IMG/VR virus record: IMGVR_UViG_3300005613_000002
Location: 62,001-126,000 of that record
Length of the DNA stretch: 64,000 bases
Direction: 5' to 3' (one strand)
The notes under the pieces were generated by a model that saw only the letters and a program-made list of their open reading frames with translations, had not been told where the DNA came from and made no database searches. Position 1 is the first letter of the stretch. Each line of letters begins with the position of its first letter. Shown here in pieces: positions 7,235-62,590 of this stretch. The position numbers and the translations under genes were made by a program.

Positions 7235-7642
7235 TAATATCTTATTATTTTTAATAAATACTTGTAATATTAAATTATTAAACATATTTTTACACTGCCA
7301 AAATCTACCCAAACCTCAACGCACAATATAAACTTATTTATCCTAAAACATTGTTGGGTATTAACCCAAGTGAAAAATTGAATGATAATAACTTGATCTA
7401 ACCAATCCAAATCAAAAGATTTGGATTTTTCCCTTAAATTGAGTATAATAAGTTAATGATTAAAATAGCGAATTTTAATGAGCATAGTATTCCTATTATT
7501 CAAATTGTTATTAGATTTGTAAAATTTAATAATCAAGTATGTAATTTTGTTTATTAAATTCGTAGAATTGAATAAAAAGACTTTTTGTGTATAAAGTGGA
7601 CTGGCTTATTAGACAGTTTGCTTTATTAAACGGAAAGTTCGT

Positions 7643-7673
7643 CAAAGTTACAAGAATTATTTTTAATAAACAA
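7643..7673 (-). promoter_or_regulatory. Bacteroidota-type promoter firing into an ORF-free intergenic region
   Basis: Minus strand TTG-N20-TAACTTTG. Confidence 0.6.
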
Positions 7674-7703
7674 GAGATTTTTAATTAAATTCAAAAAATA
7701 AAA

Positions 7704-10181
7704 TTATGTACCTGTTCCATAACCAATTTTAGCATCAACTTGTCTTTGTATTGCTGTTACTGGACGATATATTTTTTGCATAAATTTTTCACCATCAATA
7801 TTTAATGTAATATCACTAACTACTGCTACATTACTATCAGCAAATTCAACTTTTAATGGTTTTTTCAAAATATTTGCTAAGTCAGCTAACATTCCACCAC
7901 CTTTTGTATTTACTTTTGATATTGATTCGACAGCATTTTGTATTGCGATATAATCTTCTTTATTTCCAGTTAATACTGTGCTAATATTTTTAAATGCATT
8001 ACCAACTCTTGAAATTGCATCAGCATTTTTTGATATTGTTTTCATTGTTGCAGCAAATGTTAATAATCCTAATGCACCAACTGTAAATCCCATCATTGAA
8101 GCAGCTAACATTCCAACTCCTGCTCCTACTTTTATCATTGATTCACCAGCACCATTACTTTTTTCAATTAAATTTCCTAAACCTTCAGCCATTTGACCAA
8201 TTCCCCATGCAGCAATTCCAATACCAGCACCAACACCTAAAGCAGCAGCACCAAAAGCTAACATTGCTGGTGCAGCAGCAGTACCTGCCGTAGCAAACGC
8301 AAACATTGCAGGTACTAAAATTGCAACCATAGTACCACCAAGAATACCAATAGTACCATTCATCATTTTTAGTTTATCTACATCAACATCTTTAATTGCT
8401 TTTGCTAATTCACTAATACCTGCTGATGCTACACCAATACCAGCACCCACTCCAACGGCAGCAGCACCAACACCTAATCCACCTTTCATCATACCTGCAC
8501 CTCTACCAGCAGCTAATTTTCCCCTACCAGCCATTTGTGAACCAGATAAAGCAGAACCTCGACTTCCAATTCCACCAGTCAATTTATTTGCAGCACCTGA
8601 TGTTAAATTTCCAAATCCTTTTAATACAGTTTTCCATGCTAAAGCACCAGCTAATAATATACCACCAGCAGTAGCAACACCACCCCAACCACTTCCAGCA
8701 AGAGTTGACATCCAATCAGCAATAGGTCTTACCCATTCTAATGTTTTATTAACACCTCTTAATAATGGTAATAATGCACCTTTTAATGCATTTATTGTAT
8801 TTTTGAATACTTCATCAAATGTTTGTGCTTCTTTTGCTCTTTGTTGTAATGTTGTTTGTTCTTTCTGAAAAGCATTTGCTTGTTCACTAGTTAATTTACT
8901 AATATCTGTCATATGACCAGCAAGCATAACTTGGAATTTACCAGTTTTAGAATCCATCGTGGCAGCACCTTTAAGTAATTCCTTTTCACGCTTAGTTAAT
9001 CCTCTACCAGCTAATTGATTATCCATTATAGATAAATCAAGTCTTCTTTGTGCAATTTCAAACATTTCTTCTTTAGCAATACCTAAAGAATTTGCAACAT
9101 TTGATAATCTATCAACATCAGCAGGACTTATAAATTTTTCGAAGGTTGTTTTACCATCAGGACTTATTATTTTCCTTAAAGTATAAACTCCTTTAGTCAT
9201 ATTTGATATTTGTTCTGTAACCTTTTCTGGTTCATTACGAACCATATATAACCAACGGAGTGGGTCCATTTTTGCAAAATTACCACCCATTACTTGTAAA
9301 TTAGCACCTAATTCAATTACTTTTTCTAATCCTCTTGTTGCTTCAGCTACATTAAGAGCAGTTTCCATACTAACTCTAGTTTTTTCAGCATCTATAGCCA
9401 TAGTACTGAATGCTTTAACACCGTTAATAAATGTAAATGTTGATAATTTTTTGAAGTTTTTATTAATATTTGAAAGAATTTTAGTTGTATTAAGACCCAT
9501 AAGTTCAGATGTTTCTACAACACCTTGAACAAAATTCATAGTTCTTCTAACATCAATTCCCATATATTCAAATTGTGCAGCTAATTTTGTTGCTTGTTCA
9601 ACACCTAAACCAGTACCTCTACCAATAGTAGTTATATCTATCAGAGTTTCAGCCACTAAAGCACGTGCTCTGCCAGTTTCATCAGCAAAACCTTGTTGCA
9701 TTGTTCGAATATCTTCTAATGAACCACCTAAACTTGAAACGATTCCAACCGATTGTTCGAATGATTGTCTCATTAAATCAGCTTTTGCTCCCGACATTCC
9801 TAAATTAAGGATTGTTGATTTAATAATTTTATCTGAAGCTAATAAATAATCTAAACCAAGTTTAAATTGTCCAACAGTGAATTTTAATATACCTAATAAT
9901 TGTTGTCTAGTTCTAACCTCTTTTGAAACTTCAGAATTAACATTTCGTTGTTCATTTACAATTTTAGTTAATTCTTCTTTTTCTTGAGCAGTTAATGATG
10001 ATGCTTGTTTTCTTGATTCTAATACTAGTCTTTCTTGTTCAGTTTGGACTCTTTTTTGATTTGCAATATATTCTTCTTGAATTTTTATTCTATCATTAAA
10101 ATCAATAGCAGTATTTAATTGATTATTATAATCAACCTGTAAATCCCTCAATTGTTTTAAAAATTCTAATTTATCTGCCAT
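7704..10181 (-). CDS. Tape measure protein
   Basis: 825 aa; helical/coiled N-terminus; A/G-rich hydrophobic C-terminal half; lies between chaperone-like and baseplate genes. Confidence 0.8.
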   Translation of the reverse strand: MADKLEFLKQLRDLQVDYNNQLNTAIDFNDRIKIQEEYIANQKRVQTEQERLVLESRKQASSLTAQEKEELTKIVNEQRNVNSEVSKEVRTRQQLLGILKFTVGQFKLGLDYLLASDKIIKSTILNLGMSGAKADLMRQSFEQSVGIVSSLGGSLEDIRTMQQGFADETGRARALVAETLIDITTIGRGTGLGVEQATKLAAQFEYMGIDVRRTMNFVQGVVETSELMGLNTTKILSNINKNFKKLSTFTFINGVKAFSTMAIDAEKTRVSMETALNVAEATRGLEKVIELGANLQVMGGNFAKMDPLRWLYMVRNEPEKVTEQISNMTKGVYTLRKIISPDGKTTFEKFISPADVDRLSNVANSLGIAKEEMFEIAQRRLDLSIMDNQLAGRGLTKREKELLKGAATMDSKTGKFQVMLAGHMTDISKLTSEQANAFQKEQTTLQQRAKEAQTFDEVFKNTINALKGALLPLLRGVNKTLEWVRPIADWMSTLAGSGWGGVATAGGILLAGALAWKTVLKGFGNLTSGAANKLTGGIGSRGSALSGSQMAGRGKLAAGRGAGMMKGGLGVGAAAVGVGAGIGVASAGISELAKAIKDVDVDKLKMMNGTIGILGGTMVAILVPAMFAFATAGTAAAPAMLAFGAAALGVGAGIGIAAWGIGQMAEGLGNLIEKSNGAGESMIKVGAGVGMLAASMMGFTVGALGLLTFAATMKTISKNADAISRVGNAFKNISTVLTGNKEDYIAIQNAVESISKVNTKGGGMLADLANILKKPLKVEFADSNVAVVSDITLNIDGEKFMQKIYRPVTAIQRQVDAKIGYGTGT

Positions 10182-10205
10182 TATTAAACATTTACATATA
10201 AATAC

Positions 10206-10238
10206 AATAGTCCAAGTTTTTTAATGACTTGGACTATT
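10206..10238. repeat. Perfect 12-bp inverted repeat abutting the tape measure late promoter
   Basis: AATAGTCCAAGT-N9-ACTTGGACTATT; late motif at 10198-10205. Confidence 0.7.
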
Positions 10239-10400
10239 ACTATTTTTTAATCTTGCAGCTTCCTGCATTTTTTCGATTTCTTCATTTTCTTTTTGTAATA
10301 AAAACAAAAAGTGTCTTCTTCTGTAAATTGGCAGTCTTTCTACGTACTCTGCTTGAAACTTAGCGTGTTTGGTCAAAATATAAATTTCTTCATCGACCAT
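10221..10400 (-). CDS. T4 gp51-like hub/tail assembly protein (59 aa); probable -1 frameshift extension of the upstream gene
   Basis: Not in the track. MVDEEIYILTKHAKFQAEYVERLPIYRRRHFLFLLQKENEEIEKMQEAARLKNSNSPSH; this frame is open back to the T9 run at 10431-10439. Confidence 0.7.
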   Translation of the reverse strand: MVDEEIYILTKHAKFQAEYVERLPIYRRRHFLFLLQKENEEIEKMQEAARLKNSNSPSH

Positions 10401-10417
10401 TTTTTTGTAATCACCCG

Positions 10418-11317
10418 CTAGGTGCTTGGGAAAAAAAAATCTATGCCCACACTTAAATTCGTTTTAAATTTATAACCATCATTAGTCATAAATTCATATG
10501 CCATATCAACATCTGGTTTAACATCCATGATTTTTTTACGAATAGTGTACGCATCTAATGCTGGCATAGCATCAACAAATCTATCAATATATGATCTGTC
10601 ATCTTTTCCATTAATTGAAACAATACTTGCTTTTAGTTTTAACGTACTATATTGACTATAATCTTCACCATATGCTAATTTAATTTCTTCGGCTGATTTA
10701 TATATTTTTGAATCTTCACCATGACTAATTAATCTAATTATAACAGTTTTTTTACGCATTGGTATTTTTACTGAGAAATAACCTCTTTCATCAGGTTTTT
10801 CTTCAACTATTTTATATCTAAGTTTTAATAAATCTACTTTTGAATTAAATGGGATACCTGTTCTTGGGTCAACAACTTCTACAGAATAATCTGAACCATA
10901 ACTAGATGTACGTAAAAATAATAAAAGTGCATTTCTATCACCTTCTAATAAATCTTCAACTATAATTCCTTGAGATTTAATTTTTCTTTTTAATAACACA
11001 TCTAAAACAGTACCATTTTCGATTAATGATGGAGTTGTTAATAAATCTTCATCTTTAGATGTCATATATTCGATATTAACTTCAGAAACACCATTTGGGT
11101 AGTATAAACCATTTGATGGTAATTTAACTATTTCATATGATGTAATTAAATCAGGGTCAGTTTCTTTTGACATAGTTTTTTCATATTCATTAGCATTAAA
11201 GTTTGCTTTTGGAACAGAATCACCAACAACTGGGATATTATCGCCTGATTTATATTTATTTAGTGCATCAGCAATGCTTTCTTTTTTTGGTATATTATCA
11301 ATGTTTTCGTTTCCCAT
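10418..11317 (-). CDS. T4 gp26-like baseplate hub/tail assembly chaperone
   Basis: VKLPSNG, YMTSKDEDLL, GDRNALLLFLR..SYG motifs; C-terminal DFFFP. Confidence 0.75.
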   Translation of the reverse strand: MGNENIDNIPKKESIADALNKYKSGDNIPVVGDSVPKANFNANEYEKTMSKETDPDLITSYEIVKLPSNGLYYPNGVSEVNIEYMTSKDEDLLTTPSLIENGTVLDVLLKRKIKSQGIIVEDLLEGDRNALLLFLRTSSYGSDYSVEVVDPRTGIPFNSKVDLLKLRYKIVEEKPDERGYFSVKIPMRKKTVIIRLISHGEDSKIYKSAEEIKLAYGEDYSQYSTLKLKASIVSINGKDDRSYIDRFVDAMPALDAYTIRKKIMDVKPDVDMAYEFMTNDGYKFKTNLSVGIDFFFPST

Positions 11318-11430
11318 TATTATAGTTTTTTATATTTTATTATTGTTTTTAATAAATACTACAAAAAAAATTATTGAATTAATCAAGATATTTTATTTAA
11401 ATACGTATAAGTTAGTAAATAGTAAATAGT

Positions 11431-11709
11431 ATGAAAAATAATATATTAGTAATTTATGTTGGTGTAGCTGGTATTCGTGCTGAAGATATTCCTGAATATG
11501 TAAATAAGGTAGCAGCTAAAATTACACCAGTAACTTTTGAAGGTGAAATTATTTACATACCAATACAATCAAATGATACTAGAATAGAATGTGTAAATCC
11601 TAAATATATTACTGATATTGAATTGATTAATGAAAATAGAACAAAAATAAAAGAATTAAATGAAGAATTAAAATTTCAAATAAAACAATTAAAATCGAAT
11701 AAGAAATGA
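11431..11709 (+). CDS. Hypothetical protein
   Basis: 92-aa ORF overlapping the start of the next gene. Confidence 0.7.
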   Translation: MKNNILVIYVGVAGIRAEDIPEYVNKVAAKITPVTFEGEIIYIPIQSNDTRIECVNPKYITDIELINENRTKIKELNEELKFQIKQLKSNKK

Positions 11710-12443
11710 GTAAAAAAATAAAGGTTGGTATAGATATAAATGAAATTTTTAGAGCAAGATGGCTTCAATTTGATAGATTTTATGCACAGGAATTTGGTGA
11801 AGATGGTGTTCCTGATACACAACCATATGTGTATGATTTATTTAATAGTTATAAATTTGAAGACACAACTGAAACAATTAAGGAATTAAAAGAACCTGAA
11901 GATTTTCCTGAAAATATTAATCCAATTGATTATGAACTTAATGAAGAAGGTGAAGCACCAGCAGATGCTTTTTTATTTAAAAAACCTGAAGTTAATAAAT
12001 TAACTGCAAAAGAAGTTTATAATAGATTTATGTATGAAGATTTCCTTTTTGAACTTCATGCAAGTGCACCAATAATGTACAAGGGTATGGATTTACATGT
12101 TAATAATTTTTTAGAAAAATATAAAGACTCATGTGAATTTATTATTTATTCTGTTGAAAATAAATTCAGTATTCCACCAACATTATTCTTTTTAAGTAAA
12201 ATGTCATGTAGATTCAAAAATATTAAATTTATCGATAAATCTGTTGATGCTTTAAATGATGTTGATGTGTTAATTACTACTGACCCAGAAATATTATCAT
12301 TAGGTGTTCCTTGGGGTATGAAAATAATTAAAATGAGTAGACCATATAATAAAAAATTAAAATCAAATTCTATGGAAGCATTACAAATAGCTGATTTAAT
12401 TGATAATTTAGAATTTGAAAAAATAATTAAATACAAAAAATAA
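11706..12443 (+). CDS. HAD-superfamily 5'-nucleotidase-like protein (NT5C-like, degenerate)
   Basis: N-terminal VGIDINEI; DVLITTDP; KMSRPYN C-terminal motif. Confidence 0.55.
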   Translation: MSKKIKVGIDINEIFRARWLQFDRFYAQEFGEDGVPDTQPYVYDLFNSYKFEDTTETIKELKEPEDFPENINPIDYELNEEGEAPADAFLFKKPEVNKLTAKEVYNRFMYEDFLFELHASAPIMYKGMDLHVNNFLEKYKDSCEFIIYSVENKFSIPPTLFFLSKMSCRFKNIKFIDKSVDALNDVDVLITTDPEILSLGVPWGMKIIKMSRPYNKKLKSNSMEALQIADLIDNLEFEKIIKYKK

Positions 12444-12448
12444 TAAAA

Positions 12449-13627
12449 ATGAGTGAAGAATTAAATATAGCAACAAAACAAGCTGATTCTGAAAAAATAG
12501 AAAAAGTTAAATTATCTTTAGATAAAATAAAAAATAAAGAATCTAAATTTTTATTTTGTGTACCAGAATCACAAAGTCCTTCAGCAAGTGTTTATGAAAT
12601 TTATTTTCATGCAACAGTTGTAAAAAATATGGGATATAATGTAACTATTTTGGTTGAAAAAGGTGATTATGTTGCACCAAAATGGATTGAAAAAGAATTA
12701 ACACAGCATGAACATTTATCTTTAACAGACCCCAAATTAATGGTCGGTCCTGAAGACGTGATGATAATCCCTGAGATATATTCAAATGTAATGGAACAAA
12801 CTAAAAATTTACCATGCGTTAGAATTGGATTTTTACAATCAGTGGATTATATGACAAATAGTTTAATTCCCGGGACTGATTGGGCATCATTTGGAATTCA
12901 TGATATTATTACAACATCACAATCGCTTAAAGAACTATTTGAAACATTCTATGGGGAAACTAAATATAAAATTCAAACATATAATATTGGTATTCCTGAT
13001 TATTTTGAAAAATCAGATAAACCTCAAAAGCCAATAATTTCAATTATAGGTAGAAATCCAAATGAAATTTCAAAATTTGTTAAATTATTTTTTAGTAAAT
13101 ATCCACAATATAGTTGGGTTACATTTGACCCAATGTTAACTAAAAGTAAACCACCACAATCAATGCGTAGAGTTGACTTTGCAAAAAGATTGAAAGGAAA
13201 TTTTGCAGCAGTTTGGATTGATAGAATATCATCTTTTGGTACATTTCCATTAGAATGTATGAAATCTGGTGTAGTTCCAATTTGTTTTAAACCAGATATT
13301 ATCCCTGAATATTTAATTGAAAGAGATGAAAAAGGTGTTGCTAAAAAAATGGTTGAAGGTGCTGGTGTATGGACTGATAATTATTATGAATTACCAGTAC
13401 TAATGAATGATGTTTTAGTTAAGTTCCTAGATGATTCAATTTTACCAACACTATATGAATCAATGAATAATGTTGCTTCAAAATATACTCAAGAGGATTC
13501 AGAAAAACAATTAGTTGAAATATATCAAGGTTTTATTAATCAAAGAACTAGTTTGTTTGAACAGGCATTAACTACACCTGCTGAAGAAGTAAATGAAGTA
13601 GAAAAAAATAATAAAAAAGAAAAATAA
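12449..13627 (+). CDS. GT-B fold glycosyltransferase-like protein
   Basis: DVMIIPEIY; SSFGTFPLECMKSG matches the GT-B (E/S)xFGxxPLEAMxxG motif. Confidence 0.7.
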   Translation: MSEELNIATKQADSEKIEKVKLSLDKIKNKESKFLFCVPESQSPSASVYEIYFHATVVKNMGYNVTILVEKGDYVAPKWIEKELTQHEHLSLTDPKLMVGPEDVMIIPEIYSNVMEQTKNLPCVRIGFLQSVDYMTNSLIPGTDWASFGIHDIITTSQSLKELFETFYGETKYKIQTYNIGIPDYFEKSDKPQKPIISIIGRNPNEISKFVKLFFSKYPQYSWVTFDPMLTKSKPPQSMRRVDFAKRLKGNFAAVWIDRISSFGTFPLECMKSGVVPICFKPDIIPEYLIERDEKGVAKKMVEGAGVWTDNYYELPVLMNDVLVKFLDDSILPTLYESMNNVASKYTQEDSEKQLVEIYQGFINQRTSLFEQALTTPAEEVNEVEKNNKKEK

Positions 13628-13634
13628 AGTAACA

Positions 13635-14468
13635 ATGAATATATCAGTAATAATTCCAGTTCATAAATATGATGATAAAATTTCAACATATTTAAATAGT
13701 GTAATTGAATCAATAACAAAAAATGTAGGTGTAACTGAATTACCTCAAGTAATTATTGTTTATCCACCAGATATTGAAAAAGAAATTATAGGATTTAGAG
13801 ATAGTCAAGTCCGAAAATATGGTGATAAATTTTCTGAAGCTAAATATACTTTAGTGAAAAATGAAGATAAAACTGATTATCAATCACAGGTAAATTTAGG
13901 TGTTGAATATGTAAGCACTGATTATTTTTCAGTAATTGAATTTGATGATGAATTTAGTACCACTTATTTTAAAAATGTTGAACAGCATATAAACACATAT
14001 CAAGATGTTGATATTTTCTTATCAATGATAATTGAGGTTAATGATAAAAACGAAGGTATGAAATTAACTAATGAAACCGTATGGGCGCAACAATTTGTTG
14101 GTGAAAATGGTGAAATGGGTTATTTGAATGCAAAATCATTACAACAATATACAGATTTTAAATTATCTGGTGCTGTAATAAAAAAATCAGAATTTGAAAA
14201 TATTGGTAAATATAAATCAAATATAAAACTATCATTTATGTATGAGTTGTTGTTAAGGGCATTAAATAATGCGTGTAAAATATATACGATACCTAAAATC
14301 GGATATAAACATTTAGCAACAAGACCAGATAGTTTATTTGGTGAATATTCTAAATCAATGTCAATGAATGAAAGAAAATTTTGGTTTGATACAGCTAAGA
14401 ATGAGGCTAATTTTATTAATGATAGGGTTATTGATACATCACGTATAACTAAACAAATTGTTACATAA
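13635..14468 (+). CDS. GT2-like glycosyltransferase
   Basis: ISVIIPVH, QVNLGV, YFSVIEFDD motifs. Confidence 0.7.
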   Translation: MNISVIIPVHKYDDKISTYLNSVIESITKNVGVTELPQVIIVYPPDIEKEIIGFRDSQVRKYGDKFSEAKYTLVKNEDKTDYQSQVNLGVEYVSTDYFSVIEFDDEFSTTYFKNVEQHINTYQDVDIFLSMIIEVNDKNEGMKLTNETVWAQQFVGENGEMGYLNAKSLQQYTDFKLSGAVIKKSEFENIGKYKSNIKLSFMYELLLRALNNACKIYTIPKIGYKHLATRPDSLFGEYSKSMSMNERKFWFDTAKNEANFINDRVIDTSRITKQIVT

Positions 14469-14496
14469 AAATAAGACTATTAATTTTATGTAGATA

Positions 14497-15249
14497 ATGA
14501 AAGAAATTAAAAAAAGTACACCATATTTTGCTGAAAGGGAAGAACAAGCTGTAGCTGATTATATTAATTCAAACTCATTTGAGGAAAAGAATAAAATATA
14601 TAATGAGATACTGATTGAACCCTTTCGCAAAATGATTCAATCCATATTAAGAAGATATCCAATACATATTGGAAACTATGATATGGCAGAAGTAGAATCA
14701 AATGCATTAGCACATTTGATAGACCATATGGTTAAATTTAATCCAGATAAAATCACAAAATCAGGAAAAAAAACCAAGGCTTTTAGCTATTGTCAAACTA
14801 TAATTAGAAACTATTATAAAGACCATAGTAAAAAAAGTTATACTGAAAAGAAAATTAATCTATCTTTTGATGATTATGTTGATGAAATAAATAACAACAA
14901 TGAATTTGCATATGAAATTGAATTAGAATCACAACATCAACTTGAAAAATTGATTAATGAGGTAATATGTGAGATGGAGAAAATGATTGATGGTGAAACA
15001 CCGATGAAGAAAAATGAAATTATTGTTGGTGATGCAATTATTAACATCTTAAAATATTGGCATTTATTATTTTTGGAAGATAGTCCAGATGGGAAATATA
15101 ATAAAAAAGTAACTAATAAATTTCAAAAAAATAAAATATTATTTTATCTTAAAGAACAAACAGGATTAACAACTAAAGAAATTCGTATTGCTATTAAACC
15201 ATTTAAGGAAATTTATTTCTTAAAAAAAGTTAGTTATTTAGAGGAATAA
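14497..15249 (+). CDS. Phage late-transcription sigma factor (T4 gp55-like)
   Basis: PYF..EEQAV.DY N-terminus and KFNP...KAFSYCQTIIRNYY region-2-like motif resembling gp55 proteins. Confidence 0.65.
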   Translation: MKEIKKSTPYFAEREEQAVADYINSNSFEEKNKIYNEILIEPFRKMIQSILRRYPIHIGNYDMAEVESNALAHLIDHMVKFNPDKITKSGKKTKAFSYCQTIIRNYYKDHSKKSYTEKKINLSFDDYVDEINNNNEFAYEIELESQHQLEKLINEVICEMEKMIDGETPMKKNEIIVGDAIINILKYWHLLFLEDSPDGKYNKKVTNKFQKNKILFYLKEQTGLTTKEIRIAIKPFKEIYFLKKVSYLEE

Positions 15250-15309
15250 ATAAACATACAAATAATAAATTCCATCTAACTTGTATTTATATGTACTAAA
15301 ACTATTATA

Positions 15310-17021: not shown

Positions 17022-17022
17022 T

Positions 17023-17430: not shown

Positions 17431-17636
17431 TGAAAGATTTAAAAAAATATACACCAACAGAATTATTAAAAATGATTAACGAAACTAAAGATAATCATAA
17501 TAATTTAAAAGAAGAAATAGTAAGTGATACATACAAAATGGATGAACTTGAAAAAAATATTAATTCAAAACTTGATATTTTAGATAAATATGAAAAAGAT
17601 TATATTACATTATTAGAAGAAATAAATAGTAGATAA
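17430..17636 (+). CDS. Small coiled-coil hypothetical protein
   Basis: 68 aa; TAATG coupling on both sides. Confidence 0.7.
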   Translation: MKDLKKYTPTELLKMINETKDNHNNLKEEIVSDTYKMDELEKNINSKLDILDKYEKDYITLLEEINSR

Positions 17637-20564: not shown

Positions 20565-20655
20565 AATATATCGTTTTAATTGTGTTTTATTTTAATATAA
20601 ATACTATGTGTATCGAAAAACATTTTAATAATTATATCAATAACCATTAAATAAT

Positions 20656-23511: not shown

Positions 23512-23806
23512 GTTTATAAATTATTAGTTATTTTTATTTTTTTATTTTAAATCTAATTCTTATTCGAATCGTTTAAAATAAATACTGAAAAATAACGCAA
23601 AAGGTGATTTATTTTAATTATTACAATTCTGCAACACTACGTCATAACTCAATTTTCTCACTAATTTCAAGTTTTTATATTCAAATTTTTCATTTTTTTT
23701 GATTTTTTAATTTAAATTTTGATTTATTTTGTAAATTTTTTTTTTTAAAATAAATCATTAATGTGTGATTTTTATTGGTTTAGTATTTATAAAAAACAAT
23801 AAAATA

Positions 23807-25927: not shown

Positions 25928-25947
25928 TATTTTGGTATTTATATTCA

Positions 25948-28664: not shown

Positions 28665-28688
28665 GTTATTTTTTTTATATAAATACTG

Positions 28689-29358: not shown

Positions 29359-29429
29359 TGAAGATTAAAATTATCATGTGTTTATTGTTATTTTCAATAA
29401 CACCGAGTATTTATTCTAAAATAAATATT

Positions 29430-35190: not shown

Positions 35191-35224
35191 TGTTCTTTCT
35201 TATAAATACATTAAGAGTTACATT

Positions 35225-40992: not shown

Positions 40993-41106
40993 GTCGTTAA
41001 ATATCGTATTGTAATAGTTTAATTTAATATAAATACATATTCTTTATAAAAAAGTATGATTTTATGTTAAAAACTTGTTTTTTTAATTTTTTTTATTATG
41101 TAATTT

Positions 41107-41811: not shown

Positions 41812-41987
41812 GTTTATTATCTTTCTATATAAATAGTTCGAATTATTGCTTTTTAACTTTTTCTGTTTTAGTTATTTTCTTTTGTGTGTTAATATCTTCA
41901 CTAATACCACTATTGATGAATAACTTAGCCTCTAAAATCATTGATAATTTATCAATGATTGAATTGATTTCATTAAGTTTTTTTAAT

Positions 41988-42416: not shown

Positions 42417-42501
42417 ATGTATATAGTATTATAAGGATAAATAGTTTGAAAACTCTTAATAGTTTTTGATTTTTTACTTATATTGTATTTATATAAAAAA
42501 A

Positions 42502-48249: not shown

Positions 48250-48305
48250 ACTGTTGTCTTAATTTTAATATAAATACTTTTATTAGTAATTAAAAACGAA
48301 TCTTG

Positions 48306-50303: not shown

Positions 50304-50380
50304 TTTATAATTTTTTATATTTTTTTATAAATACTTTCATTTTTGCGAAAAGTACACTTTTAGATAAATACATTTAAATT

Positions 50381-52426: not shown

Positions 52427-52469
52427 TTATAATTTTTTATAATAAATACTTAAACTATTTAAAACCGCA

Positions 52470-53058: not shown

Positions 53059-53086
53059 GTTATTTTTTTTCATAAATACTATAAAC

Positions 53087-55193: not shown

Positions 55194-55270
55194 TTTTTTG
55201 TTTTTATATTGACTATTATATGATTTACATTTTTTATAAATACTTAATTGATAATAAAAAAGTTATTTTA

Positions 55271-56323: not shown

Positions 56324-56764
56324 TTAACCAACGGTTGGAATAGATTTAACAGGAACGTTAGGTTTAGTTTCATCTAATTCTTCCTTATCATCATCTTTTT
56401 TTTCTTCTTTTGGTTTTTCATCATCTTTTTCGTCATCATCCTTTTTCTTATCAAAATTCCACTCTTGTAGATTTTCTTCAGGAGATGTGTTATTATCTAT
56501 TTCAACACTTGCTTCTTCTTCTTCTTCACCAGTTGCATCACCTCCATTAACTAATGTATATAATTCTCCAACTTTTTCTTTTAGTTCATCATATTTTTGC
56601 TCAATTGTTTTTTCTTCAACTTCGGGAGTTTCAGTTGCATCAATTTCAACACTTGCTGGTTCTGCTGGTAATTCATTATCGAAATTTTCGTTTAAACTAG
56701 GCTTAAATGTTTTATCTAATTTATGCATTACTTCGAAAAGTCTTTTTTTATCGTTTTTTTTCAT
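56324..56764 (-). CDS. Acidic putative internal head protein
   Basis: KRLFEVM...SLNE N-terminus, acidic body; late motifs at 56791 and 56860. Confidence 0.6.
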   Translation of the reverse strand: MKKNDKKRLFEVMHKLDKTFKPSLNENFDNELPAEPASVEIDATETPEVEEKTIEQKYDELKEKVGELYTLVNGGDATGEEEEEASVEIDNNTSPEENLQEWNFDKKKDDDEKDDEKPKEEKKDDDKEELDETKPNVPVKSIPTVG

Positions 56765-56917
56765 AATTATGATTTTATATTTTTATTATTATAAATACAC
56801 ATTATTGATGAATTTAACCCACTATTCATCTATTCATCATAATAAATGTGTGATTTTATATAAATACGCAATTTTAAATTAAAATCATATAGTATTTATT
56901 ATAAATTCTTGAGTAAA

Positions 56918-58231
56918 ATGAGTTTAGATTGTTTAAATAGTATAATTACAGATAATTTAGCAATTCACATTGACCTAACTGACAGTAAATCATGGAATTT
57001 AAATACTGATTTAATTGTTAATAGTTTAAATAAGTGGAATGAGGCAATTTCTGATGATATTGATCTAATTGACTTTGGATTAACAGGTTTTGATAATGGT
57101 AGAGTGGATTCTATGAATTCAGGAATAACATTAACTCAAAATGATAATAAATTAACACTTAATAGAGTTGGGTATAATGATATTAGTGGTGGTACTTATT
57201 ATAGTGGATATACTGTTACATCACATAGTGGTGCATCAGTAGGTAATTATTTTTCATTAAATGGTGGATATCTTCAAGGTTTTTTTAAATTAGAAGATTA
57301 TGATTTCGAATTATTTCCACCTCGATATAATAGTGGTATTACTATTGAAACAGTGATTGAAATATTACCAGAATCTGAAGGTACATTCTTTTTAATGGGT
57401 GTTAGAGCAGAAGATAAATATAATTCATTTTTTAGTGGTGAGACAACAATAACTGGAACAACTGAGGTATCATATGGCGGTAACTCAACTGGTCAATCAA
57501 TTCAATTTAGTGGAATCACAACAAGTGAAGATAATTATTTGGTATCATATGATGAAGATGAAGTAAATCTGAGTTCGTTCAAACAACCAGAATATAAAGA
57601 GTTTACAATATTTGATGAACCAATACAAGTTGATAATATTGGAAATAATATTATTTCGTTTGATATAACTGATTTAAAGAAGTTAAAATATAGATATGTT
57701 AATTCTGACGGTATTTTAGTTCAAAATGAATCATCTAATTCTATAAGTAGAACTGGTTGGACTATAATTGATATTGTATTTAAGCCATATTCGATTATTA
57801 ATGAATATGACCCAACAATTTATAAATGTTATGATAGAAGGAAAGGTGATCTTATTTTTTATGTAAATGGTAGAGTATTTTGGAAGATAAAAGATTTTGA
57901 TGAATTTTATTTTATTGGAATTAATAATGATAAAGAAAAACAATTAGGTGTTCCATATAATATTAGTTGGGGTGGTGGTTCATTTGGTTTGAAACATTCT
58001 TGGCATTTTAATAATTTCAATCGTAATGAAATTATACAAGATGAAACAAAAAATGATTTATTTATTGAAAAATATTTTAATTCATCATTTATTGGAAACA
58101 TACAAAAATTAAGAATATATGATACAGCATTATTATCAAACGAAATATTAAATAACACAATTATTGAATCTAAAAACAATACTTATTATAATATTTCCGT
58201 TTCTAAAGGTGGTAGAATAATATATAGATAA
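56918..58231 (+). CDS. LamG/concanavalin-like virion protein
   Basis: ITIET, FYVNG and FIGNIQKLRIYDTAL LamG-type motifs; late motif at 56892. Confidence 0.6.
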   Translation: MSLDCLNSIITDNLAIHIDLTDSKSWNLNTDLIVNSLNKWNEAISDDIDLIDFGLTGFDNGRVDSMNSGITLTQNDNKLTLNRVGYNDISGGTYYSGYTVTSHSGASVGNYFSLNGGYLQGFFKLEDYDFELFPPRYNSGITIETVIEILPESEGTFFLMGVRAEDKYNSFFSGETTITGTTEVSYGGNSTGQSIQFSGITTSEDNYLVSYDEDEVNLSSFKQPEYKEFTIFDEPIQVDNIGNNIISFDITDLKKLKYRYVNSDGILVQNESSNSISRTGWTIIDIVFKPYSIINEYDPTIYKCYDRRKGDLIFYVNGRVFWKIKDFDEFYFIGINNDKEKQLGVPYNISWGGGSFGLKHSWHFNNFNRNEIIQDETKNDLFIEKYFNSSFIGNIQKLRIYDTALLSNEILNNTIIESKNNTYYNISVSKGGRIIYR

Positions 58232-58941: not shown

Positions 58942-59541
58942 TTAACAAAATTGAGATATTGCTGATTTATTTATATTATCACGTATGTCCATAGTAGTTT
59001 CAGTTGAAATAAAACCACTTACATATTCTCTAATAAATAAATTTTTTATATTTATAGGTGCTTTTTCAAAAGCTAAAAATTTTAGTTCCTCACCATCATC
59101 ACTAAATAATGATATTTCGATATCCTCCCAATTAATATAATTAAACCAAGCATTACCTGATGGTGGCGTATTATAATCACCACTATCACTTTCACCACTT
59201 GCTGTTACACTAATATTACTACTATTAAATTCTAATGCTAGTTTTATTGGGTCTTTATTTGAATCATATAAATATTCAATATTAAGTCCATATTCAATAG
59301 TAATATTATTCATTTCATCGTAACTGGATTCAAAATCTCCACCTATTGATGCATTAGTTGTTTCAATTATTTTAATTTTGTTATTTTGCCTTAATAGCGA
59401 GTCACAAATAAATTGTTTTTGTAATTCCTCATTGTTAAGTAAGTCAATGTATTCTTGATATTTAACATTTGTGTCATTATTAAGAAAATCAAAATTGTTG
59501 ATTTCTTCGGTTATAATTTTTTGAAAATTAATTTTATACAT
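58942..59541 (-). CDS. Hypothetical late protein
   Basis: KIITEEI N-terminus; late motif at 59558. Confidence 0.65.
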   Translation of the reverse strand: MYKINFQKIITEEINNFDFLNNDTNVKYQEYIDLLNNEELQKQFICDSLLRQNNKIKIIETTNASIGGDFESSYDEMNNITIEYGLNIEYLYDSNKDPIKLALEFNSSNISVTASGESDSGDYNTPPSGNAWFNYINWEDIEISLFSDDGEELKFLAFEKAPINIKNLFIREYVSGFISTETTMDIRDNINKSAISQFC

Positions 59542-59741
59542 TGATTATAATTTTGTAATAAATACTCATAATTTTTATTAAATCGAAAAAAAATATTAAA
59601 AATCATTGTATTTATAATTGAAAAATGACTGCGCTTGCTTAATCAATGAATTAAGTTACGTTTTCTATGACAAATTAGCATGATTTTTTTAATTTTATAG
59701 CCAGATAGTGGTTACGTGAAATTTTAAACTTAATAATTTAT

Positions 59742-60345: not shown

Positions 60346-60375
60346 TTGTATTTATGATTTTAATGCGTATATTTG
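60346..60375 (+). promoter_or_regulatory. Host-type promoter (with overlapping late motif) for the leader/tRNA operon
   Basis: TTG-N19-TATATTTG; GTATTTAT at 60348-60355. Confidence 0.75.
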
Positions 60376-60563: not shown

Positions 60564-60658
60564 CTGGGATTGAACGAGTGGTTGAAGTTACCAGCCTTGG
60601 AAACTGGTGAGGGCGATAAGATGGTTGTCCTCCGTGGGTTCGAACCCCACATCCCAGA
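60564..60658 (+). tRNA. tRNA-Pro(UGG) on a Ser-like class II scaffold
   Basis: Acceptor CTGGGAT/ATCCCAG, A73; anticodon arm CCAGC-CTTGGAA-ACTGG; 8-bp variable stem; T arm GTGGG-TTCGAAC-CCCAC. Confidence 0.8.
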
Positions 60659-60660
60659 CA

Positions 60661-60803
60661 AATGAATAATGGTAGTGTTAATATTATATATGGAGTAACT
60701 TGATGAATCCTTGAAGGAACGCTTGGTGAAAAATAGTAAAAGTATATAACAACAACACGCTAGTCGAAGATGACTGGAGTTATAGGCGAAAATCCTATTC
60801 ATT
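60661..60803 (+). ncRNA. tRNA-like structured ncRNA 1
   Basis: End pairing AATGA/TCATT; ATAATGGTA D-loop-like segment; long helix GTGTT..TTATATA/TATATAA..AACAC; hairpin CTAGTC/GACTGG; T-arm-like ATAGG-CGAAAAT-CCTAT. Confidence 0.55.
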
Positions 60804-60815
60804 GTTTATAAATAT

Positions 60816-60901
60816 GGTGATTGTTGCAGAGTGGTCAAATGCGCCAGATTGTGGTTCTGGTATCCGAAAGGATTTCGTGGGTTCGAAACCCATCATTCAC
60901 C
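60816..60901 (+). tRNA. tRNA-His(GUG) on a Tyr-like class II scaffold
   Basis: G-1:C73; anticodon arm CCAGA-TTGTGGT-TCTGG; variable arm ATCC-GAAA-GGAT. Confidence 0.85.
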
Positions 60902-60908
60902 CAAAAAT

Positions 60909-61021
60909 AATTAGTTACCCTGCTTGTTCCGTATGGGGTTATAAAAATACATCAATTAACGGAACTCATGATGGAGTCCTTGCCAAGAAAGTAGGATAAA
61001 GATGTTAGATATTAACTAATT
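60909..61021 (+). ncRNA. Structured ncRNA 2, possibly pseudoknotted
   Basis: Closing stem AATTAGTTA/TAACTAATT; GTTCCGT/ACGGAAC; TCCT/AGGA hairpin; loop ACATC can pair with GATGT. Confidence 0.5.
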
Positions 61022-61030
61022 TATAAATAT

Positions 61031-61105
61031 CGGGTAGTTATGCAGATGGCTATACAACGATGCCTTGGACGCATCGGTTCGCAGGTTCGAATCCTGCCTA
61101 TCCGA
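61031..61105 (+). tRNA. tRNA-Pro(UGG), atypical D arm, A37
   Basis: CGGGTAG/CTATCCG, A73; CGATGC-CTTGGAC-GCATCG; GCAGG-TTCGAAT-CCTGC. Confidence 0.75.
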
Positions 61106-61113
61106 CATAATAT

Positions 61114-61186
61114 AGAGTAGTAGCGCAGTTGGTAGCGTACTGCATTTGGGATGCAGGGGTCGCAGGTTCAAGTCCTGTCTACTCTA
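61114..61186 (+). tRNA. tRNA-Pro(UGG), class I, G37
   Basis: AGAGTAG/CTACTCT, A73; CTGCA-TTTGGGA-TGCAG; canonical D and T arms. Confidence 0.88.
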
Positions 61187-61188
61187 CT

Positions 61189-61260
61189 GTGTTAGTAGCA
61201 TAACTGGCTAATGCGCCACACTGTGAATGTGGAGAATAGGGTTCGAGTCCCTCTAACACC
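61189..61260 (+). tRNA. tRNA-His(GUG), class I, A37, 4-bp T stem
   Basis: GTGTTAG/CTAACAC, C73; CCACA-CTGTGAA-TGTGG; AGGG-TTCGAGT-CCCT. Confidence 0.8.
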
Positions 61261-61266
61261 CAACTT

Positions 61267-61350
61267 AGTCCTATGGTGGAATTGGTAAACACATCGTCCT
61301 TTGAAGGCGACACCCGAAAGGGTTTGTAGGTTCGAGTCCTACTAGGATTG
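61267..61350 (+). tRNA. tRNA-Gln(UUG) on a Leu-like class II scaffold
   Basis: AGTCCTA/TAGGATT, G73; D arm GTGGAATTGGTAAACAC; TCGTC-CTTTGAA-GGCGA; variable arm ACCC-GAAA-GGGT. Confidence 0.85.
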
Positions 61351-61383
61351 CAAAAGTGTGAAAAACATACTTTATTAAGACGA

Positions 61384-61471
61384 AAGAAGATTCAGAGATG
61401 GTTGACATTCATGTAACCAATAGCTCGATAATGGTAGGGTTATAGTGAAAAGTGATAATAATCTTCTTCCA
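61384..61471 (+). ncRNA. Structured ncRNA 3 ending in CCA
   Basis: Closing stem AAGAAGATT/AATCTTCTT + CCA; hairpin TGGTT-G-ACAT/ATGT-AACCA; ATAATGGTAG shared with ncRNA 1. Confidence 0.5.
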
Positions 61472-61505
61472 ATATGAAGTACAAGTATTGGATAGTCTTT
61501 TTTAT

Positions 61506-61580
61506 TGCCCATTGGTGTAATTGGCTAACACATCTGATTTTGATTCAGAAGACTTATAGGTTCGAATCCTATATGGGCAA
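61506..61580 (+). tRNA. tRNA-Gln(UUG), class I, A37
   Basis: TGCCCAT/ATGGGCA; TCTGA-TTTTGAT-TCAGA; ATAGG-TTCGAAT-CCTAT. Confidence 0.9.
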
Positions 61581-61633
61581 CTTTTCTCTTGCTACTTATT
61601 ATTTTTTTAATTATATTTATGAAAAATATAATT

Positions 61634-61831
61634 ATGGATGCAGAAGAACTATTGAAATATCTAAAAAAATGTGTTGAAGACCTAAATTTAGGTTATGAAC
61701 CAATTATAACTCCAACAAAGTCAGACCCAAGAAAATATCAAACAGATGTGTCTATTATTGTTATGGAAAAAGCATTGGTGGGTAATAGACCAATATTCAA
61801 AATAAACGTAAAAGATTTAATAAAAGGATAA
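61634..61831 (+). CDS. Hypothetical protein
   Basis: Likely start MDAEELL; first ORF after the tRNA array. Confidence 0.6.
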   Translation: MDAEELLKYLKKCVEDLNLGYEPIITPTKSDPRKYQTDVSIIVMEKALVGNRPIFKINVKDLIKG

Positions 61832-61832
61832 T

Positions 61833-62117
61833 ATGATTTACAAACTAAAACATGTTCCAACTGGTTTATATTATCAACCACATAGACATCGAGGTAGCAA
61901 TTTAAGTAAAAGAGGTAAAATTTATCAAACTTCTACTCATGGTCTATCATCAGCATTTAAAAATAAAAGAGCAACATTTACTGTTTATTGTGAAAAAGAT
62001 AGTCGCATATATAAATTATGTAATAATATTTTAAATTTCGAAGATTATAGATTTTCATATAATCAAGTAAAAGCTGAAACAAAAGTAAGTGATTGGATAA
62101 TTGAAGAAATTAAATAA
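61833..62117 (+). CDS. Hypothetical protein
   Basis: 94 aa, YKLKHVPTGLYY...LSKRGKIY. Confidence 0.65.
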   Translation: MIYKLKHVPTGLYYQPHRHRGSNLSKRGKIYQTSTHGLSSAFKNKRATFTVYCEKDSRIYKLCNNILNFEDYRFSYNQVKAETKVSDWIIEEIK

Positions 62118-62122
62118 AAACA

Positions 62123-62521
62123 ATGAAATATAATTTATTCTTAGATGATGTTAGAAACCCGATTGATTGTGTATACTACATGTATACACCAATATATACT
62201 AGTGTTGACTGGGTGATAGTTAGAGATTATAATTCTTTTATTAAAATAATTAAAGAAAATGGTTTACCTGAAATAATCTCCTTCGATCATGATTTATCTG
62301 ATGAACATTATGACCCAAAAATGTATCATGAATCATATGATGAATTATATGATTCATTTAAAGAAAAAACTGGTTACGAATGTGCTAAATGGTTGGTAGA
62401 TTATTGTATTGATAATAATGAATTTCTACCAAAAAAAATATTAGTACATTCAATGAATCCTATTGGTAGACGAAATATTGAGTCTTATTTCGAATCATAT
62501 AATAAATCATTAAAATTATAG
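62123..62521 (+). CDS. Cyclic-phosphate-processing receiver (cREC)-domain protein
   Basis: LFLDD.R.P, ISFDHDL, KTGYECAKWL and VHSMNP.G motifs. Confidence 0.75.
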   Translation: MKYNLFLDDVRNPIDCVYYMYTPIYTSVDWVIVRDYNSFIKIIKENGLPEIISFDHDLSDEHYDPKMYHESYDELYDSFKEKTGYECAKWLVDYCIDNNEFLPKKILVHSMNPIGRRNIESYFESYNKSLKL

Positions 62522-62590
62522 TTTAATAATTATTTTATTAAGTTCTTAATTTTTATATTTTCTTTTGTATTTATTTAAAAACACAATATT

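What the first reader, a model, noticed from the sequence alone, without database searches (positions are those of the whole stretch)
7254..62574. Late promoter is GTATTTAT(A), the reverse complement of T4's TATAAATA
Seen: (G/C)TATTTAT lies on the coding strand shortly upstream of nearly every structural gene. Plus strand: 15283, 23783, 25935, 29407, 42485, 56892, 59608, 60348, 62567. Minus strand: 7254, 10198, 11352, 20597, 23578, 28679, 35202, 41029, 41829, 42437, 48270, 50327, 52442, 53072, 55236, 56791, 59558. Its orientation follows the gene, and it does not mark the metabolic operons. Inference: it is read by the gp55-like sigma at 14497-15249, which has altered specificity. It may already be noted in related phages.
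Basis: partly seen in the sequence, partly recalled or inferred. Interest (0 to 1): 0.6.

Follow-up and report, generated by a model that had tools for sequence, protein, structure and literature searches.

The report
Late promoter of a jumbo phage
An 8-base signal, GTATTTAT, sits just upstream of the virion genes of a 322-kb T4-related giant phage and its many uncultured relatives, and is most likely the switch for late genes, read by a very divergent T4 gp55-like sigma factor encoded in the same window.

Summary
All 26 listed sites are real. GTATTTAT is the top strand-specific 8-mer upstream of genes in the whole 321,624-bp genome: 56 sense, 9 antisense, 5 expected. Of its 92 copies, 61 lie within 80 nt upstream of a same-strand start (P about 1e-50). 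The raw count is not unusual; the placement is.

The logo is (A)GTATTTAT-N3-AAA with no -35 element. The conserved A five bases after the motif coincides with the ATG of several genes, so it is probably the transcription start.

The motif stays the top upstream 8-mer in 80 related contigs. Its core, TATTTAT(A), marks structural genes in distant relatives and in the cultured Flavobacterium phage vB_FspM_immuto.

The ORF at 14497-15249 is a sigma factor. It has a sigma region 2 fold, it ties with T4 gp55 for the best structural match, and its profile matches gp55 at 84% probability. It also carries an extra C-terminal domain. No gp33 or gp45 was found, and two ECF-like sigmas are encoded elsewhere.

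The "reverse complement of T4" reading is true letter for letter but probably meaningless. On the same strand TATTTATA matches TATAAATA at 6 of 8 positions.

No RNA data exist, so both promoter function and the sigma assignment are inferred. I rate this a new variant of a known kind.

The parts
14497..15249 (+). Candidate late sigma factor (P0001, 250 aa): sigma region 2 domain (about residues 7-120) plus a helical C-terminal domain (about 136-250)
   Evidence: In P0001 itself, Pfam Sigma70_r2 reaches only E 0.089, but 28 of 80 family members hit it. The PDB profile search returns sigma factors, including gp55. AF2 pLDDT is 90.7. VIA-align gives gp55 7d7c_F Z 9.8; sigmaE/RpoS/SigW region 2 domains give Z 8-9 at rmsd 2.7-3.3. 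hhalign against 10 gp55 sequences: probability 84%. The C-terminal domain folded alone gives no clear match; sigma4 rows score only Z 5.1-5.6.
7254..7261 (-). GTATTTAT, 19 nt before the ATG of the ORF 4058-7234 (1058 aa, no family hit); heads the minus-strand operon running to the window start
10198..10205 (-). GTATTTAT, 16 nt before ORF 7704-10181 (825 aa)
11352..11359 (-). GTATTTAT, 34 nt before the baseplate hub-like gene 10418-11317
   Evidence: phrog_150; PF12322 in the relatives' orthologue
15283..15290 (+). GTATTTAT, 19 nt before ORF 15310-15690. Heads the operon 15310-19339, which includes a gp5-like baseplate hub/lysozyme. The site is conserved in relatives while the upstream flank varies.
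20597..20604 (-). GTATTTAT, 32 nt before ORF 20073-20564 (163 aa)
23578..23585 (-). GTATTTAT, 66 nt before the tail sheath gene 20707-23511
   Evidence: (phrog_23, E 1e-60)
23783..23790 (+). GTATTTAT, 16 nt before ORF 23807-25927 (706 aa); divergent partner of the sheath promoter
25935..25942 (+). GTATTTAT, 5 nt before the ATG of ORF 25948-27102 (nearly leaderless)
28679..28686 (-). GTATTTAT, 14 nt before ORF 27900-28664
29407..29414 (+). GTATTTAT, 15 nt before an HNH homing endonuclease ORF (29430-30065), inside the dUTPase/thymidylate synthase operon
35202..35209 (-). GTATTTAT, 26 nt before ORF 34054-35175; heads the minus-strand operon down to 32318
41029..41036 (-). GTATTTAT, 36 nt before ORF 39454-40992, which is followed by the gp23-like major head protein 37744-39429
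   Evidence: (phrog_138, E 2e-67)
41829..41836 (-). CTATTTAT, 17 nt before the prohead protease gene 41107-41811
42437..42444 (-). CTATTTAT, 20 nt before ORF 41988-42416
42485..42492 (+). GTATTTAT, 9 nt before the 1647-aa ORF 42502-47445, which has a C-terminal peptidase/lysin domain; divergent partner of 42437
48270..48277 (-). GTATTTAT, 20 nt before ORF 47473-48249
50327..50334 (-). GTATTTAT, 23 nt before the portal gene 48306-50303; a second copy lies at 50364-50371
   Evidence: (phrog_213)
52442..52449 (-). GTATTTAT, 15 nt before the large terminase gene 50381-52426
53072..53079 (-). GTATTTAT, 13 nt before ORF 52570-53058
55236..55243 (-). GTATTTAT, 42 nt before ORF 53142-55193 (683 aa)
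56791..56798 (-). GTATTTAT, 26 nt before ORF 56324-56764; a second copy lies at 56860-56867
56892..56899 (+). GTATTTAT, 18 nt before ORF 56918-58231; divergent partner of 56860/56791
59558..59565 (-). GTATTTAT, 16 nt before ORF 58942-59541
59608..59615 (+). GTATTTAT with no ORF of 50 aa or more within 100 nt; divergent partner of 59558; target unknown
60348..60355 (+). GTATTTAT with no ORF close by; a cluster of 7 tRNA genes starts 209 nt downstream (60564-61581)
62567..62574 (+). GTATTTAT, 16 nt before ORF 62591-end of window

Best explanation
GTATTTAT, more fully (A)GTATTTAT-N3-AAA, is the -10-like core of a single-element late promoter class. The phage is a 322-kb T4-superfamily jumbo phage whose host is probably a member of the Bacteroidota.

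Proposed mechanism: host core RNA polymerase is redirected to these sites by the phage protein encoded at 14497-15249. This is a highly divergent sigma whose region 2 domain is homologous to that of T4 gp55. Transcription starts at the conserved A four to five bases downstream of the octamer. That gives very short or absent leaders, which fits a genome without Shine-Dalgarno sequences.

The sigma gene does not itself carry the motif, so it would be made earlier and then switch on virion, lysis and homing-endonuclease genes.

Shown:
- the motif's placement, orientation and conservation;
- the sigma fold and the homology to gp55.

Inferred:
- that the motif is a promoter;
- that it is late;
- the position of the start site;
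- that this sigma, rather than another factor, reads it.
For: Placement and architecture:
- It is the top unsupervised upstream 8-mer with an approximately 6:1 strand bias. 61 of 92 copies lie within 80 nt upstream of same-strand starts, P 8.6e-51.
- The logo shows no -35 element. An A occurs at the 5th base after the motif in 63 of 71 intergenic sites, and in 81 of 93 distinct sites in relatives whose sigma is 60-72% identical.
- Several genes, here and in distant relatives, have their ATG exactly at or next to that A.
- In the window, 10 of 18 genes that lead a divergent unit carry it, often on both sides of a junction.

Target genes:
- Sheath, portal, large terminase, prohead protease, baseplate hub, the major head protein operon, a tail fibre and an amidase.
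- The motif is nearly absent from genome 183-261 kb. That stretch of small genes uses a different, bipartite promoter.

Conservation:
- It is the top upstream 8-mer in 51 and in 29 related IMG/VR loci.
- The site downstream of the sigma gene is conserved while its upstream flank is not.
- The core (C/A)TATTTAT(A) lies upstream of structural genes in relatives whose sigma is 35-45% identical.
- In the cultured Flavobacterium phage immuto, TATTTATA occurs 12 times upstream of structural-region genes against 0.6 expected.

Sigma identity.

Link between the sigma and the motif:
- Immuto has a clear homologue, gp118 (hhalign 99.7%).
- Immuto has the motif but no canonical Sigma70_r2 gene.
- The window genome's other promoter class, TGTAAC-N16-CGTATAA, has the typical ECF architecture and so plausibly accounts for the two ECF-like sigmas.
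- No phage RNA polymerase subunits were found.
Against: - There is no transcript evidence of any kind. No RNA run holds this phage.
- The sigma-motif link rests on co-occurrence and elimination only.
- Two ECF-like sigmas are encoded elsewhere in the genome.
- P0001 has an extra C-terminal domain of unresolved fold that could be a sigma4-like domain. A sigma4 domain would normally imply a -35 element, and none is seen.
- The motif resembles the Bacteroidota housekeeping -7 element TAnnTTTG at 6 of 8 positions, so host sigma A is not excluded.
- Some motif-bearing genes are not late-type: the ribonucleotide reductase large subunit, an SbcD-like exonuclease, and a tRNA nucleotidyltransferase/RNA ligase fusion.
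- The modal 14-17 nt spacing to the ATG could also fit an RNA-level signal.
Confidence: 0.6

Rival explanations
1. The motif is a late or middle promoter, but it is read by one of the two canonical ECF-like sigma factors (genome 185699-186265 and 294176-294742) and not by the protein at 14497-15249.
For: - Both are clear Sigma70_r2 proteins with region 4.
- There is precedent, from my own knowledge, for phage ECF-like sigmas using a single extended -10 element (phiEco32 gp36).
- The three jumbo relatives tested (G001-G003) each carry 2-3 such sigmas.
Against: - The genome has a separate promoter class with the classic ECF layout, TGTAAC-N16-CGTATAA: 44 sense against 3 antisense. That class would be their natural target.
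- Flavobacterium phage immuto keeps the TATTTATA motif upstream of virion genes and has a P0001 homologue, but no detectable Sigma70_r2 gene.
Confidence: 0.12
2. The motif is read by the host's own primary sigma as a variant of the Bacteroidota -7 element. Timing would be set by a phage activator or by DNA replication or modification, and the protein at 14497-15249 would have another role.
For: - TATTTATA matches TAnnTTTG at 6 of 8 positions (my comparison; the consensus is from established knowledge of Bacteroides and Flavobacterium promoters).
- The host is probably Bacteroidota. The closest cultured relative infects Flavobacterium. Only 3% of genes have SD-like tetramers. A TTTG-N19-TATATTTG site heads the thymidylate synthase operon.
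Against: - No -33 TTTG partner appears in the logo.
- The final G of the host element, which is conserved there, is absent.
- The motif is almost missing from the 183-261 kb block of small genes.
- A conserved sigma family co-occurs with the motif across 35-100% identity.
Confidence: 0.15
3. The motif acts at the RNA level, as a processing site or a translation-initiation enhancer in an organism without Shine-Dalgarno sequences, and not as a promoter.
For: - There is a modal spacing of 14-17 nt from the motif's end to the ATG: 24 of 61 sites.
- The genome lacks SD sequences.
Against: - The spacing ranges from 4 to 79 nt. In several genes the ATG begins 4-5 nt after the motif, which leaves no room for a 5' UTR element.
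- The motif occurs on both sides of divergent junctions, where transcription must start.
- It precedes a tRNA cluster and heads multi-gene operons rather than every gene.
- It is absent from hundreds of genes in the 183-261 kb block, which also need translation.
Confidence: 0.05

Closest known systems
Bacteriophage T4 late promoter TATAAATA, read by gp55 with gp33 and the gp45 sliding clamp
   Same: - A single AT-rich octamer of -10 type, with no -35 element, on the coding strand upstream of virion, lysis and homing-endonuclease genes.
- The phage belongs to the T4 superfamily: gp23-like head protein found in 2535 phage records, and T4-type baseplate, sheath, portal and terminase.
- The candidate sigma shares the region 2 fold and detectable profile homology with gp55.
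- The family's nearly invariant Tyr98 aligns with gp55 Tyr97, which stacks on the flipped base at -12 (PMC7892883). The residue-level alignment is tentative.
   Different: - The consensus is TATTTATA with a 5' G. It differs from T4's octamer at the two central positions, one of which (-9) is a flipped, pocket-bound base in T4 (PMC7892883).
- T4's own octamer is not enriched in sense orientation.
- The inferred start lies about 2 nt closer to the octamer than in T4.
- The sigma is 250 aa, with an extra C-terminal domain in place of gp55's short clamp-binding tail.
- Single-sequence and PHROG searches do not link it to gp55.
- No gp33 or gp45 was detected.
Late promoters of other T4-like phages (cyanophage and other 'exo-T-even' variants of TATAAATA)
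   Same: The same kind of lineage-specific drift of a one-element late promoter within the T4 superfamily.
   Different: The variants I know of (from my own knowledge and the reviews PMC2988020, PMC1524935, PMC3037559, which I did not re-read in detail) keep the AAATA core. Here the centre is TTT. I found no paper describing this motif.
Group 2 jumbo phages of Iyer et al. 2021 (gp23-type capsid, no phage RNA polymerase, phage-encoded sigma factors)
   Same: A gp23-type capsid, no RNA polymerase subunits detected, and several phage sigma factors (PMC7824862).
   Different: That survey reports gp33 orthologues in group 2 phages. None was detected here by tblastn with T4 gp33. It does not describe promoter motifs.
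Bacteroidota housekeeping promoter (-33 TTTG / -7 TAnnTTTG)
   Same: An AT-rich element starting with TA, lying unusually close to the start site; the host is probably from this phylum.
   Different: There is no -33 element. Positions 6 and 8 differ (A and A/T in place of T and G). The motif is restricted to late-type genes.

Membership tests
T4-type late promoter | A single conserved octamer of -10 type with no -35 element | tested here: met
   Logos of 71 genome sites and of 93 distinct sites in relatives show information only in the octamer and at A-rich positions 4-6 nt downstream.
T4-type late promoter | Consensus TATAAATA on the non-template strand | tested here: not met
   The consensus is GTATTTAT(A). 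TATAAATA occurs 18 times in sense against 46 in antisense upstream of genes. The same-strand match is 6 of 8.
T4-type late promoter | Precedes late (virion, lysis) genes and is absent from early genes | tested here: met
   It precedes sheath, portal, terminase, protease, hub, head operon, tail fibre and amidase genes. Only one copy lies in 183-261 kb. A few non-structural genes also carry it.
T4-type late promoter | Transcripts start a fixed short distance downstream, late in infection | not testable with these tools
   No RNA run holds the phage. The start is inferred from the conserved A and from ATGs placed 4-5 nt after the motif.
gp55-type late sigma | Sigma region 2 homology domain | tested here: met
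   Region 2 domains of sigmaE, RpoS and SigW align over residues 7-120 with Z 8-9 and rmsd 2.7-3.3; gp55 chain 7d7c_F gives Z 9.8 with 120 of 137 residues aligned.
gp55-type late sigma | Sequence homology to gp55 itself | tested here: inconclusive
   Profile-profile against 10 gp55 sequences: probability 84%, E 7e-6, 113 collinear columns. Against T4 gp55 alone the probability is only 23%. There is no PHROG hit, and tblastn with gp55 finds nothing in the genome.
gp55-type late sigma | Minimal architecture (about 185 aa, no region 4) with a C-terminal clamp-binding tail | tested here: not met
   The protein is 250 aa with a confidently folded helical C-terminal domain of about 115 aa. The fold of that domain is unresolved; sigma4 rows score only Z 5.1-5.6.
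gp55-type late sigma | Works with the gp33 co-activator and the gp45 sliding clamp | tested here: inconclusive
   Pfam gp45 models (PF09116, PF02916) and tblastn with T4 gp33 find nothing. These proteins diverge fast, so absence is not shown.
ECF (group 4) sigma, as an alternative filing for P0001 | Region 2 plus region 4, and a bipartite -35/-10 promoter with AAC and CGT motifs | tested here: not met
   The motif has no -35 partner. The ECF-type bipartite promoter exists in this genome as a separate class. Region 4 of P0001 is not demonstrated.
Bacteroidota sigma A promoter | -33 TTTG plus -7 TAnnTTTG | tested here: not met
   There is no TTTG upstream in the logo, and the octamer differs at two positions. 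Genuine candidates of this type occur elsewhere, for example upstream of window 28737.

The most novel reading that the evidence does not exclude
A large, globally distributed clade of T4-superfamily phages has replaced the T4 gp55/gp33/sliding-clamp late system. The clade includes uncultured 300-365 kb jumbo phages from digesters and sediments, and cultured Flavobacterium phages. In this reading the replacement is a self-sufficient two-domain late sigma (the P0001 family) that reads TATTTATA and starts nearly leaderless transcripts. Late transcription in this clade would then not be coupled to DNA replication, and the two central T's would report a re-tooled base pocket in region 2.
Probability: 0.25. 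Interest if true: 0.65.

Novelty: new variant of a known kind. Interest (0 to 1): 0.45.

Why it matters
- It gives a ready sequence rule for annotating late transcription units and start codons in hundreds of uncultured jumbo phage contigs that otherwise have almost no functional annotation. The sigma family has 929 close relatives and 629 representatives at 50% identity.
- It assigns a function to a protein family that is annotated as 'hypothetical' even in cultured Flavobacterium phages.
- It offers a natural comparison for how gp55-type sigmas recognise the -10-like element. Compared with T4, two central bases differ, one of them a flipped base in the T4 structure.
- A culturable system exists in which to test it: Flavobacterium sp. 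LMO8 with phage vB_FspM_immuto.

Tried and rejected
- A near-identity DNA search of phage GenBank records found nothing.
- PHROGs gave no hit for P0001 or its operon neighbours.
- A single-sequence PDB search gave only noise.
- Foldseek gave no match with E below 0.001, although sigma factors dominated its list.
- Folding the C-terminal domain alone and searching 48,161 PDB representatives gave no clear fold. I do not claim it is sigma4, nor that it is new.
- Pfam models found no multisubunit RNA polymerase.
- T4 gp45 (Pfam), gp33 and gp55 (tblastn) were not found in the genome. BLASTP of the small ORF after the sigma against gp33 gave nothing.
- The search for sequencing runs found only two DNA runs with 5% of the sampled words and no RNA run. 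I therefore did not use read laying, and there is no expression evidence.
- Rfam found nothing in the relatives' sigma genes that carry an insertion.
- 'Chance AT-rich word' is rejected on placement statistics, not on count.
- Four literature searches found no description of this motif. The library lacks most subscription journals.

Full report
**What the window is.** The window is bases 62,001-126,000 of a complete 321,624-bp virus record with direct terminal repeats and 27.5% G+C. It carries the virion module of a T4-superfamily myovirus.
- The major head protein is gp23-like. It gives tblastn hits in 2535 phage records, including T4-like coliphages and cyanophages.
- Tail sheath, portal, large terminase, prohead protease and baseplate hub genes are all present.
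- The closest cultured relative is Flavobacterium phage vB_FspM_immuto.
- Only 3% of genes have a Shine-Dalgarno-like tetramer, against 10% in a within-gene control.
- A TTTG-N19-TATATTTG site of Bacteroidota type heads the thymidylate synthase operon.

The host is therefore probably a member of the Bacteroidota. This is an inference.

**The observation.** The word is not unusually frequent. [GC]TATTTAT occurs 35 times against about 20 expected in the window. Genome-wide, GTATTTAT ranks only 34th of 168 words of the same composition. What is exceptional is where it sits.
- Of the 92 genome copies, 71 are in the roughly 10% of the genome that is intergenic.
- 61 lie within 80 nt upstream of a start codon on the same strand (P 8.6e-51).
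- I counted all 8-mers in the 80 nt upstream of 498 crude gene calls, with no motif assumed beforehand. GTATTTAT came first: 56 sense, 9 antisense, 5.2 expected.
- In the window, 10 of the 18 genes that lead a divergent transcription unit carry it. Several junctions have one copy facing each way: 23578/23783, 42437/42485, 56860-56791/56892 and 59558/59608.

**Anatomy.** The logo of the 71 intergenic sites is (A)GTATTTAT, three unconstrained bases, then an A-rich triplet. Its middle A is present in 63 of 71 sites. Nothing resembling a -35 element is seen, only a faint T-rich patch 13-15 nt upstream.

The same logo comes from 93 distinct sites in relatives whose sigma is 60-72% identical: A in 81 of 93.

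The distance from the octamer to the ATG peaks at 14-17 nt and ranges from 4 to 79 nt. In several genes here, and in distant relatives, the ATG begins 4 or 5 nt after the octamer, exactly at the conserved A. That is what a leaderless transcript starting at that A would look like. I therefore predict the start site 4-5 nt after the final T. This places the octamer at about -12 to -5. The prediction is an inference and can be tested directly.

**What it marks.** In the window it heads the units containing:
- the sheath, portal, terminase, protease and baseplate hub genes;
- the operon with the major head protein;
- a 1647-aa protein with a C-terminal lysin domain;
- many unannotated large proteins.

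It is absent from the heads of the sigma/glycosyltransferase operon (11431-15249), the helicase operon (35225-37691) and the KTSC/dUTPase/thymidylate synthase operon (28737-31674).

One site (29407) sits inside the last of these, in front of an HNH homing endonuclease. Two homing endonucleases outside the window also carry it. From my own knowledge, T4 homing endonuclease genes are often late-expressed too.

Site 60348 precedes a cluster of seven tRNA genes.

Outside the window the motif also precedes a tail fibre and an amidase. It precedes some non-structural genes as well: a ribonucleotide reductase subunit, an SbcD-like exonuclease, and a tRNA nucleotidyltransferase/RNA ligase fusion. So 'late' fits well but is not exclusive.

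The motif has a single copy in genome 183-261 kb. That is a block of about 200 small genes that uses a different promoter.

**Conservation.**
- The sigma-like protein has 929 close relatives, many on 300-365 kb contigs.
- In 80 IMG/VR loci around its homologues, GTATTTAT is again the top upstream 8-mer. In the 72-81% identity group (L014-L064) it scores 184 sense, 15 antisense, 10.8 expected. In the 60-72% identity group (L065-L093) it scores 85, 9 and 5.5.
- Downstream of the sigma gene, the octamer and the 15 nt after it are conserved while the upstream flank varies freely.
- In relatives whose sigma is only 35-45% identical, the core persists as (C/A)TATTTAT(A) directly upstream of gp25-like, gp13-neighbouring and other structural genes.
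- In the annotated structural region of Flavobacterium phage immuto, TATTTATA is the top upstream 8-mer, with 12 occurrences against 0.6 expected. It lies in front of the terminase, portal, sheath, tube and hub genes.

**The sigma.** The ORF at 14497-15249 (P0001) has no PHROG hit, and its Pfam Sigma70_r2 hit is sub-threshold at E 0.089. Deeper evidence is consistent.
- 28 of 80 diverse family members hit Sigma70_r2, the best at E 5e-7.
- A family profile finds almost only sigma factors in the PDB, including T4 gp55.
- The AlphaFold model has pLDDT 90.7. Its best structural matches are all sigma factors. gp55 (7d7c_F; Z 9.8, 120 of 137 residues) ties for first place, and isolated region 2 domains fit at rmsd 2.7-3.3.
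- A profile-profile comparison with ten gp55 sequences gives 84% probability and E 7e-6 over 113 collinear columns starting at the N-terminus.
- In that alignment the family's nearly invariant Tyr98 falls on gp55 Tyr97, the residue that stacks on the flipped -12 adenine (PMC7892883). At this level of similarity the residue mapping is tentative.

The protein is not a minimal gp55. It has a confidently folded C-terminal domain of about 115 aa whose fold I could not assign. I also found no gp33 or gp45.

**Which factor reads the motif.** This is the weakest link. The genome encodes two canonical ECF-like sigmas. It has no detectable RNA polymerase subunits. Three observations favour P0001.
- The genome has a second, bipartite promoter class, TGTAAC-N16-CGTATAA(T), with 44 sense against 3 antisense. 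Its layout is that of ECF promoters, so it is the natural target of the ECF-like sigmas.
- Phage immuto has the motif and a clear P0001 homologue (gp118; hhalign 99.7%), but no detectable Sigma70_r2 gene.
- The P0001 gene is not itself preceded by the motif, as expected for the factor that turns the class on.

Host sigma A remains possible, because the octamer resembles the Bacteroidota -7 element.

**The 'reverse complement of T4' idea.** TATTTATA is indeed the reverse complement of TATAAATA, and 41 of 71 sites continue with A. However, sigma region 2 binds the unwound non-template strand and inserts individual bases into pockets. In T4 these are the bases at -12, -9 and -8 (PMC7892883). A reverse complement therefore has no special meaning.

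Read on the same strand, the two octamers agree at six of eight positions and differ only at the two central ones (AA in T4, TT here). The simpler description is a T4-type late promoter with two central substitutions plus a 5' G.

T4's own octamer is not used. It occurs 18 times in sense against 46 in antisense upstream of genes, and the antisense hits are the other strand of the TATTTATA sites.

**Novelty and verdict.** Phage late promoters and phage sigmas are well known, and jumbo phages of this group are known to encode sigmas (PMC7824862). I found no description of this motif or of this sigma family's role.

I rate it a new variant of a known kind. It is solid as a sequence finding and unproven as a mechanism. 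A cultured phage-host pair is available for the decisive 5'-end mapping and in vitro tests.

My confidence that the motif is a promoter element of a late-type class is about 0.8. My confidence that the protein at 14497-15249 reads it is about 0.55-0.6.

Noticed in passing
genome 186-272 kb (outside the window); inside the window only the CGTATAA half occurs, about 11403-11410 and about 14441-14448 (+): A second promoter class is strongly strand-specific: TGTAAC-N16-CGTATAA(T), 44 sense against 3 antisense. It has the classic ECF-sigma layout and is concentrated in a block of about 200 small genes where GTATTTAT is nearly absent. Two canonical ECF-like sigma genes lie at genome 185699-186265 (+) and 294176-294742 (-). 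Together with the late class, this suggests a sigma cascade.
   Followed up: partly
window about 28690-28736 (+), upstream of ORF 28737-29069: A TTTG-N19-TATATTTG site matches the Bacteroidota housekeeping promoter consensus. It heads the KTSC / HNH / dUTPase / thymidylate synthase operon. This is a hint at the host phylum and at how early genes are read.
   Followed up: partly
window 60564-61581 (+): A cluster of seven tRNA genes (Pro x3, His x2, Gln x2) lies here. Several are unusually long (85-96 nt). The cluster is 209 nt downstream of the GTATTTAT at 60348.
   Followed up: no
L019 1386-2499, L020, L021, L027 6389-7434, L039, L040, L047, L059: In several relatives the sigma gene's match spans 1045-1125 bp instead of 750 bp. 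The gene is therefore interrupted by an insertion of about 300-370 bp (intron, intein or small mobile ORF?). Rfam finds no known family there.
   Followed up: partly
whole genome; examples at window 25935 and 42485, and in L095 and L096: Only 3% of genes have a Shine-Dalgarno-like tetramer. Several genes have their ATG 4-5 nt after the octamer, which implies leaderless or nearly leaderless late mRNAs.
   Followed up: partly
window 19326-20012 (-) and 29430-30065 (+); genome 157234-157935 and 163751-164575: Homing endonuclease genes (LAGLIDADG, HNH, GIY-YIG-like) are scattered through the genome. Three of the four have their own GTATTTAT site.
   Followed up: no
genome 12430-17862 (-), outside the window: A 1810-aa ORF combines tRNA nucleotidyltransferase and RNA ligase domains. 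It is preceded by GTATTTAT at 18 nt, which is an unusual fusion for a late-type gene.
   Followed up: no
window 15310-15690 (+): A small conserved ORF (126 aa) always follows the sigma gene or lies close to it, also in phage immuto (gp117), and has the best-conserved late promoter. It shows no similarity to T4 gp33 by BLASTP, and its role is unknown.
   Followed up: partly
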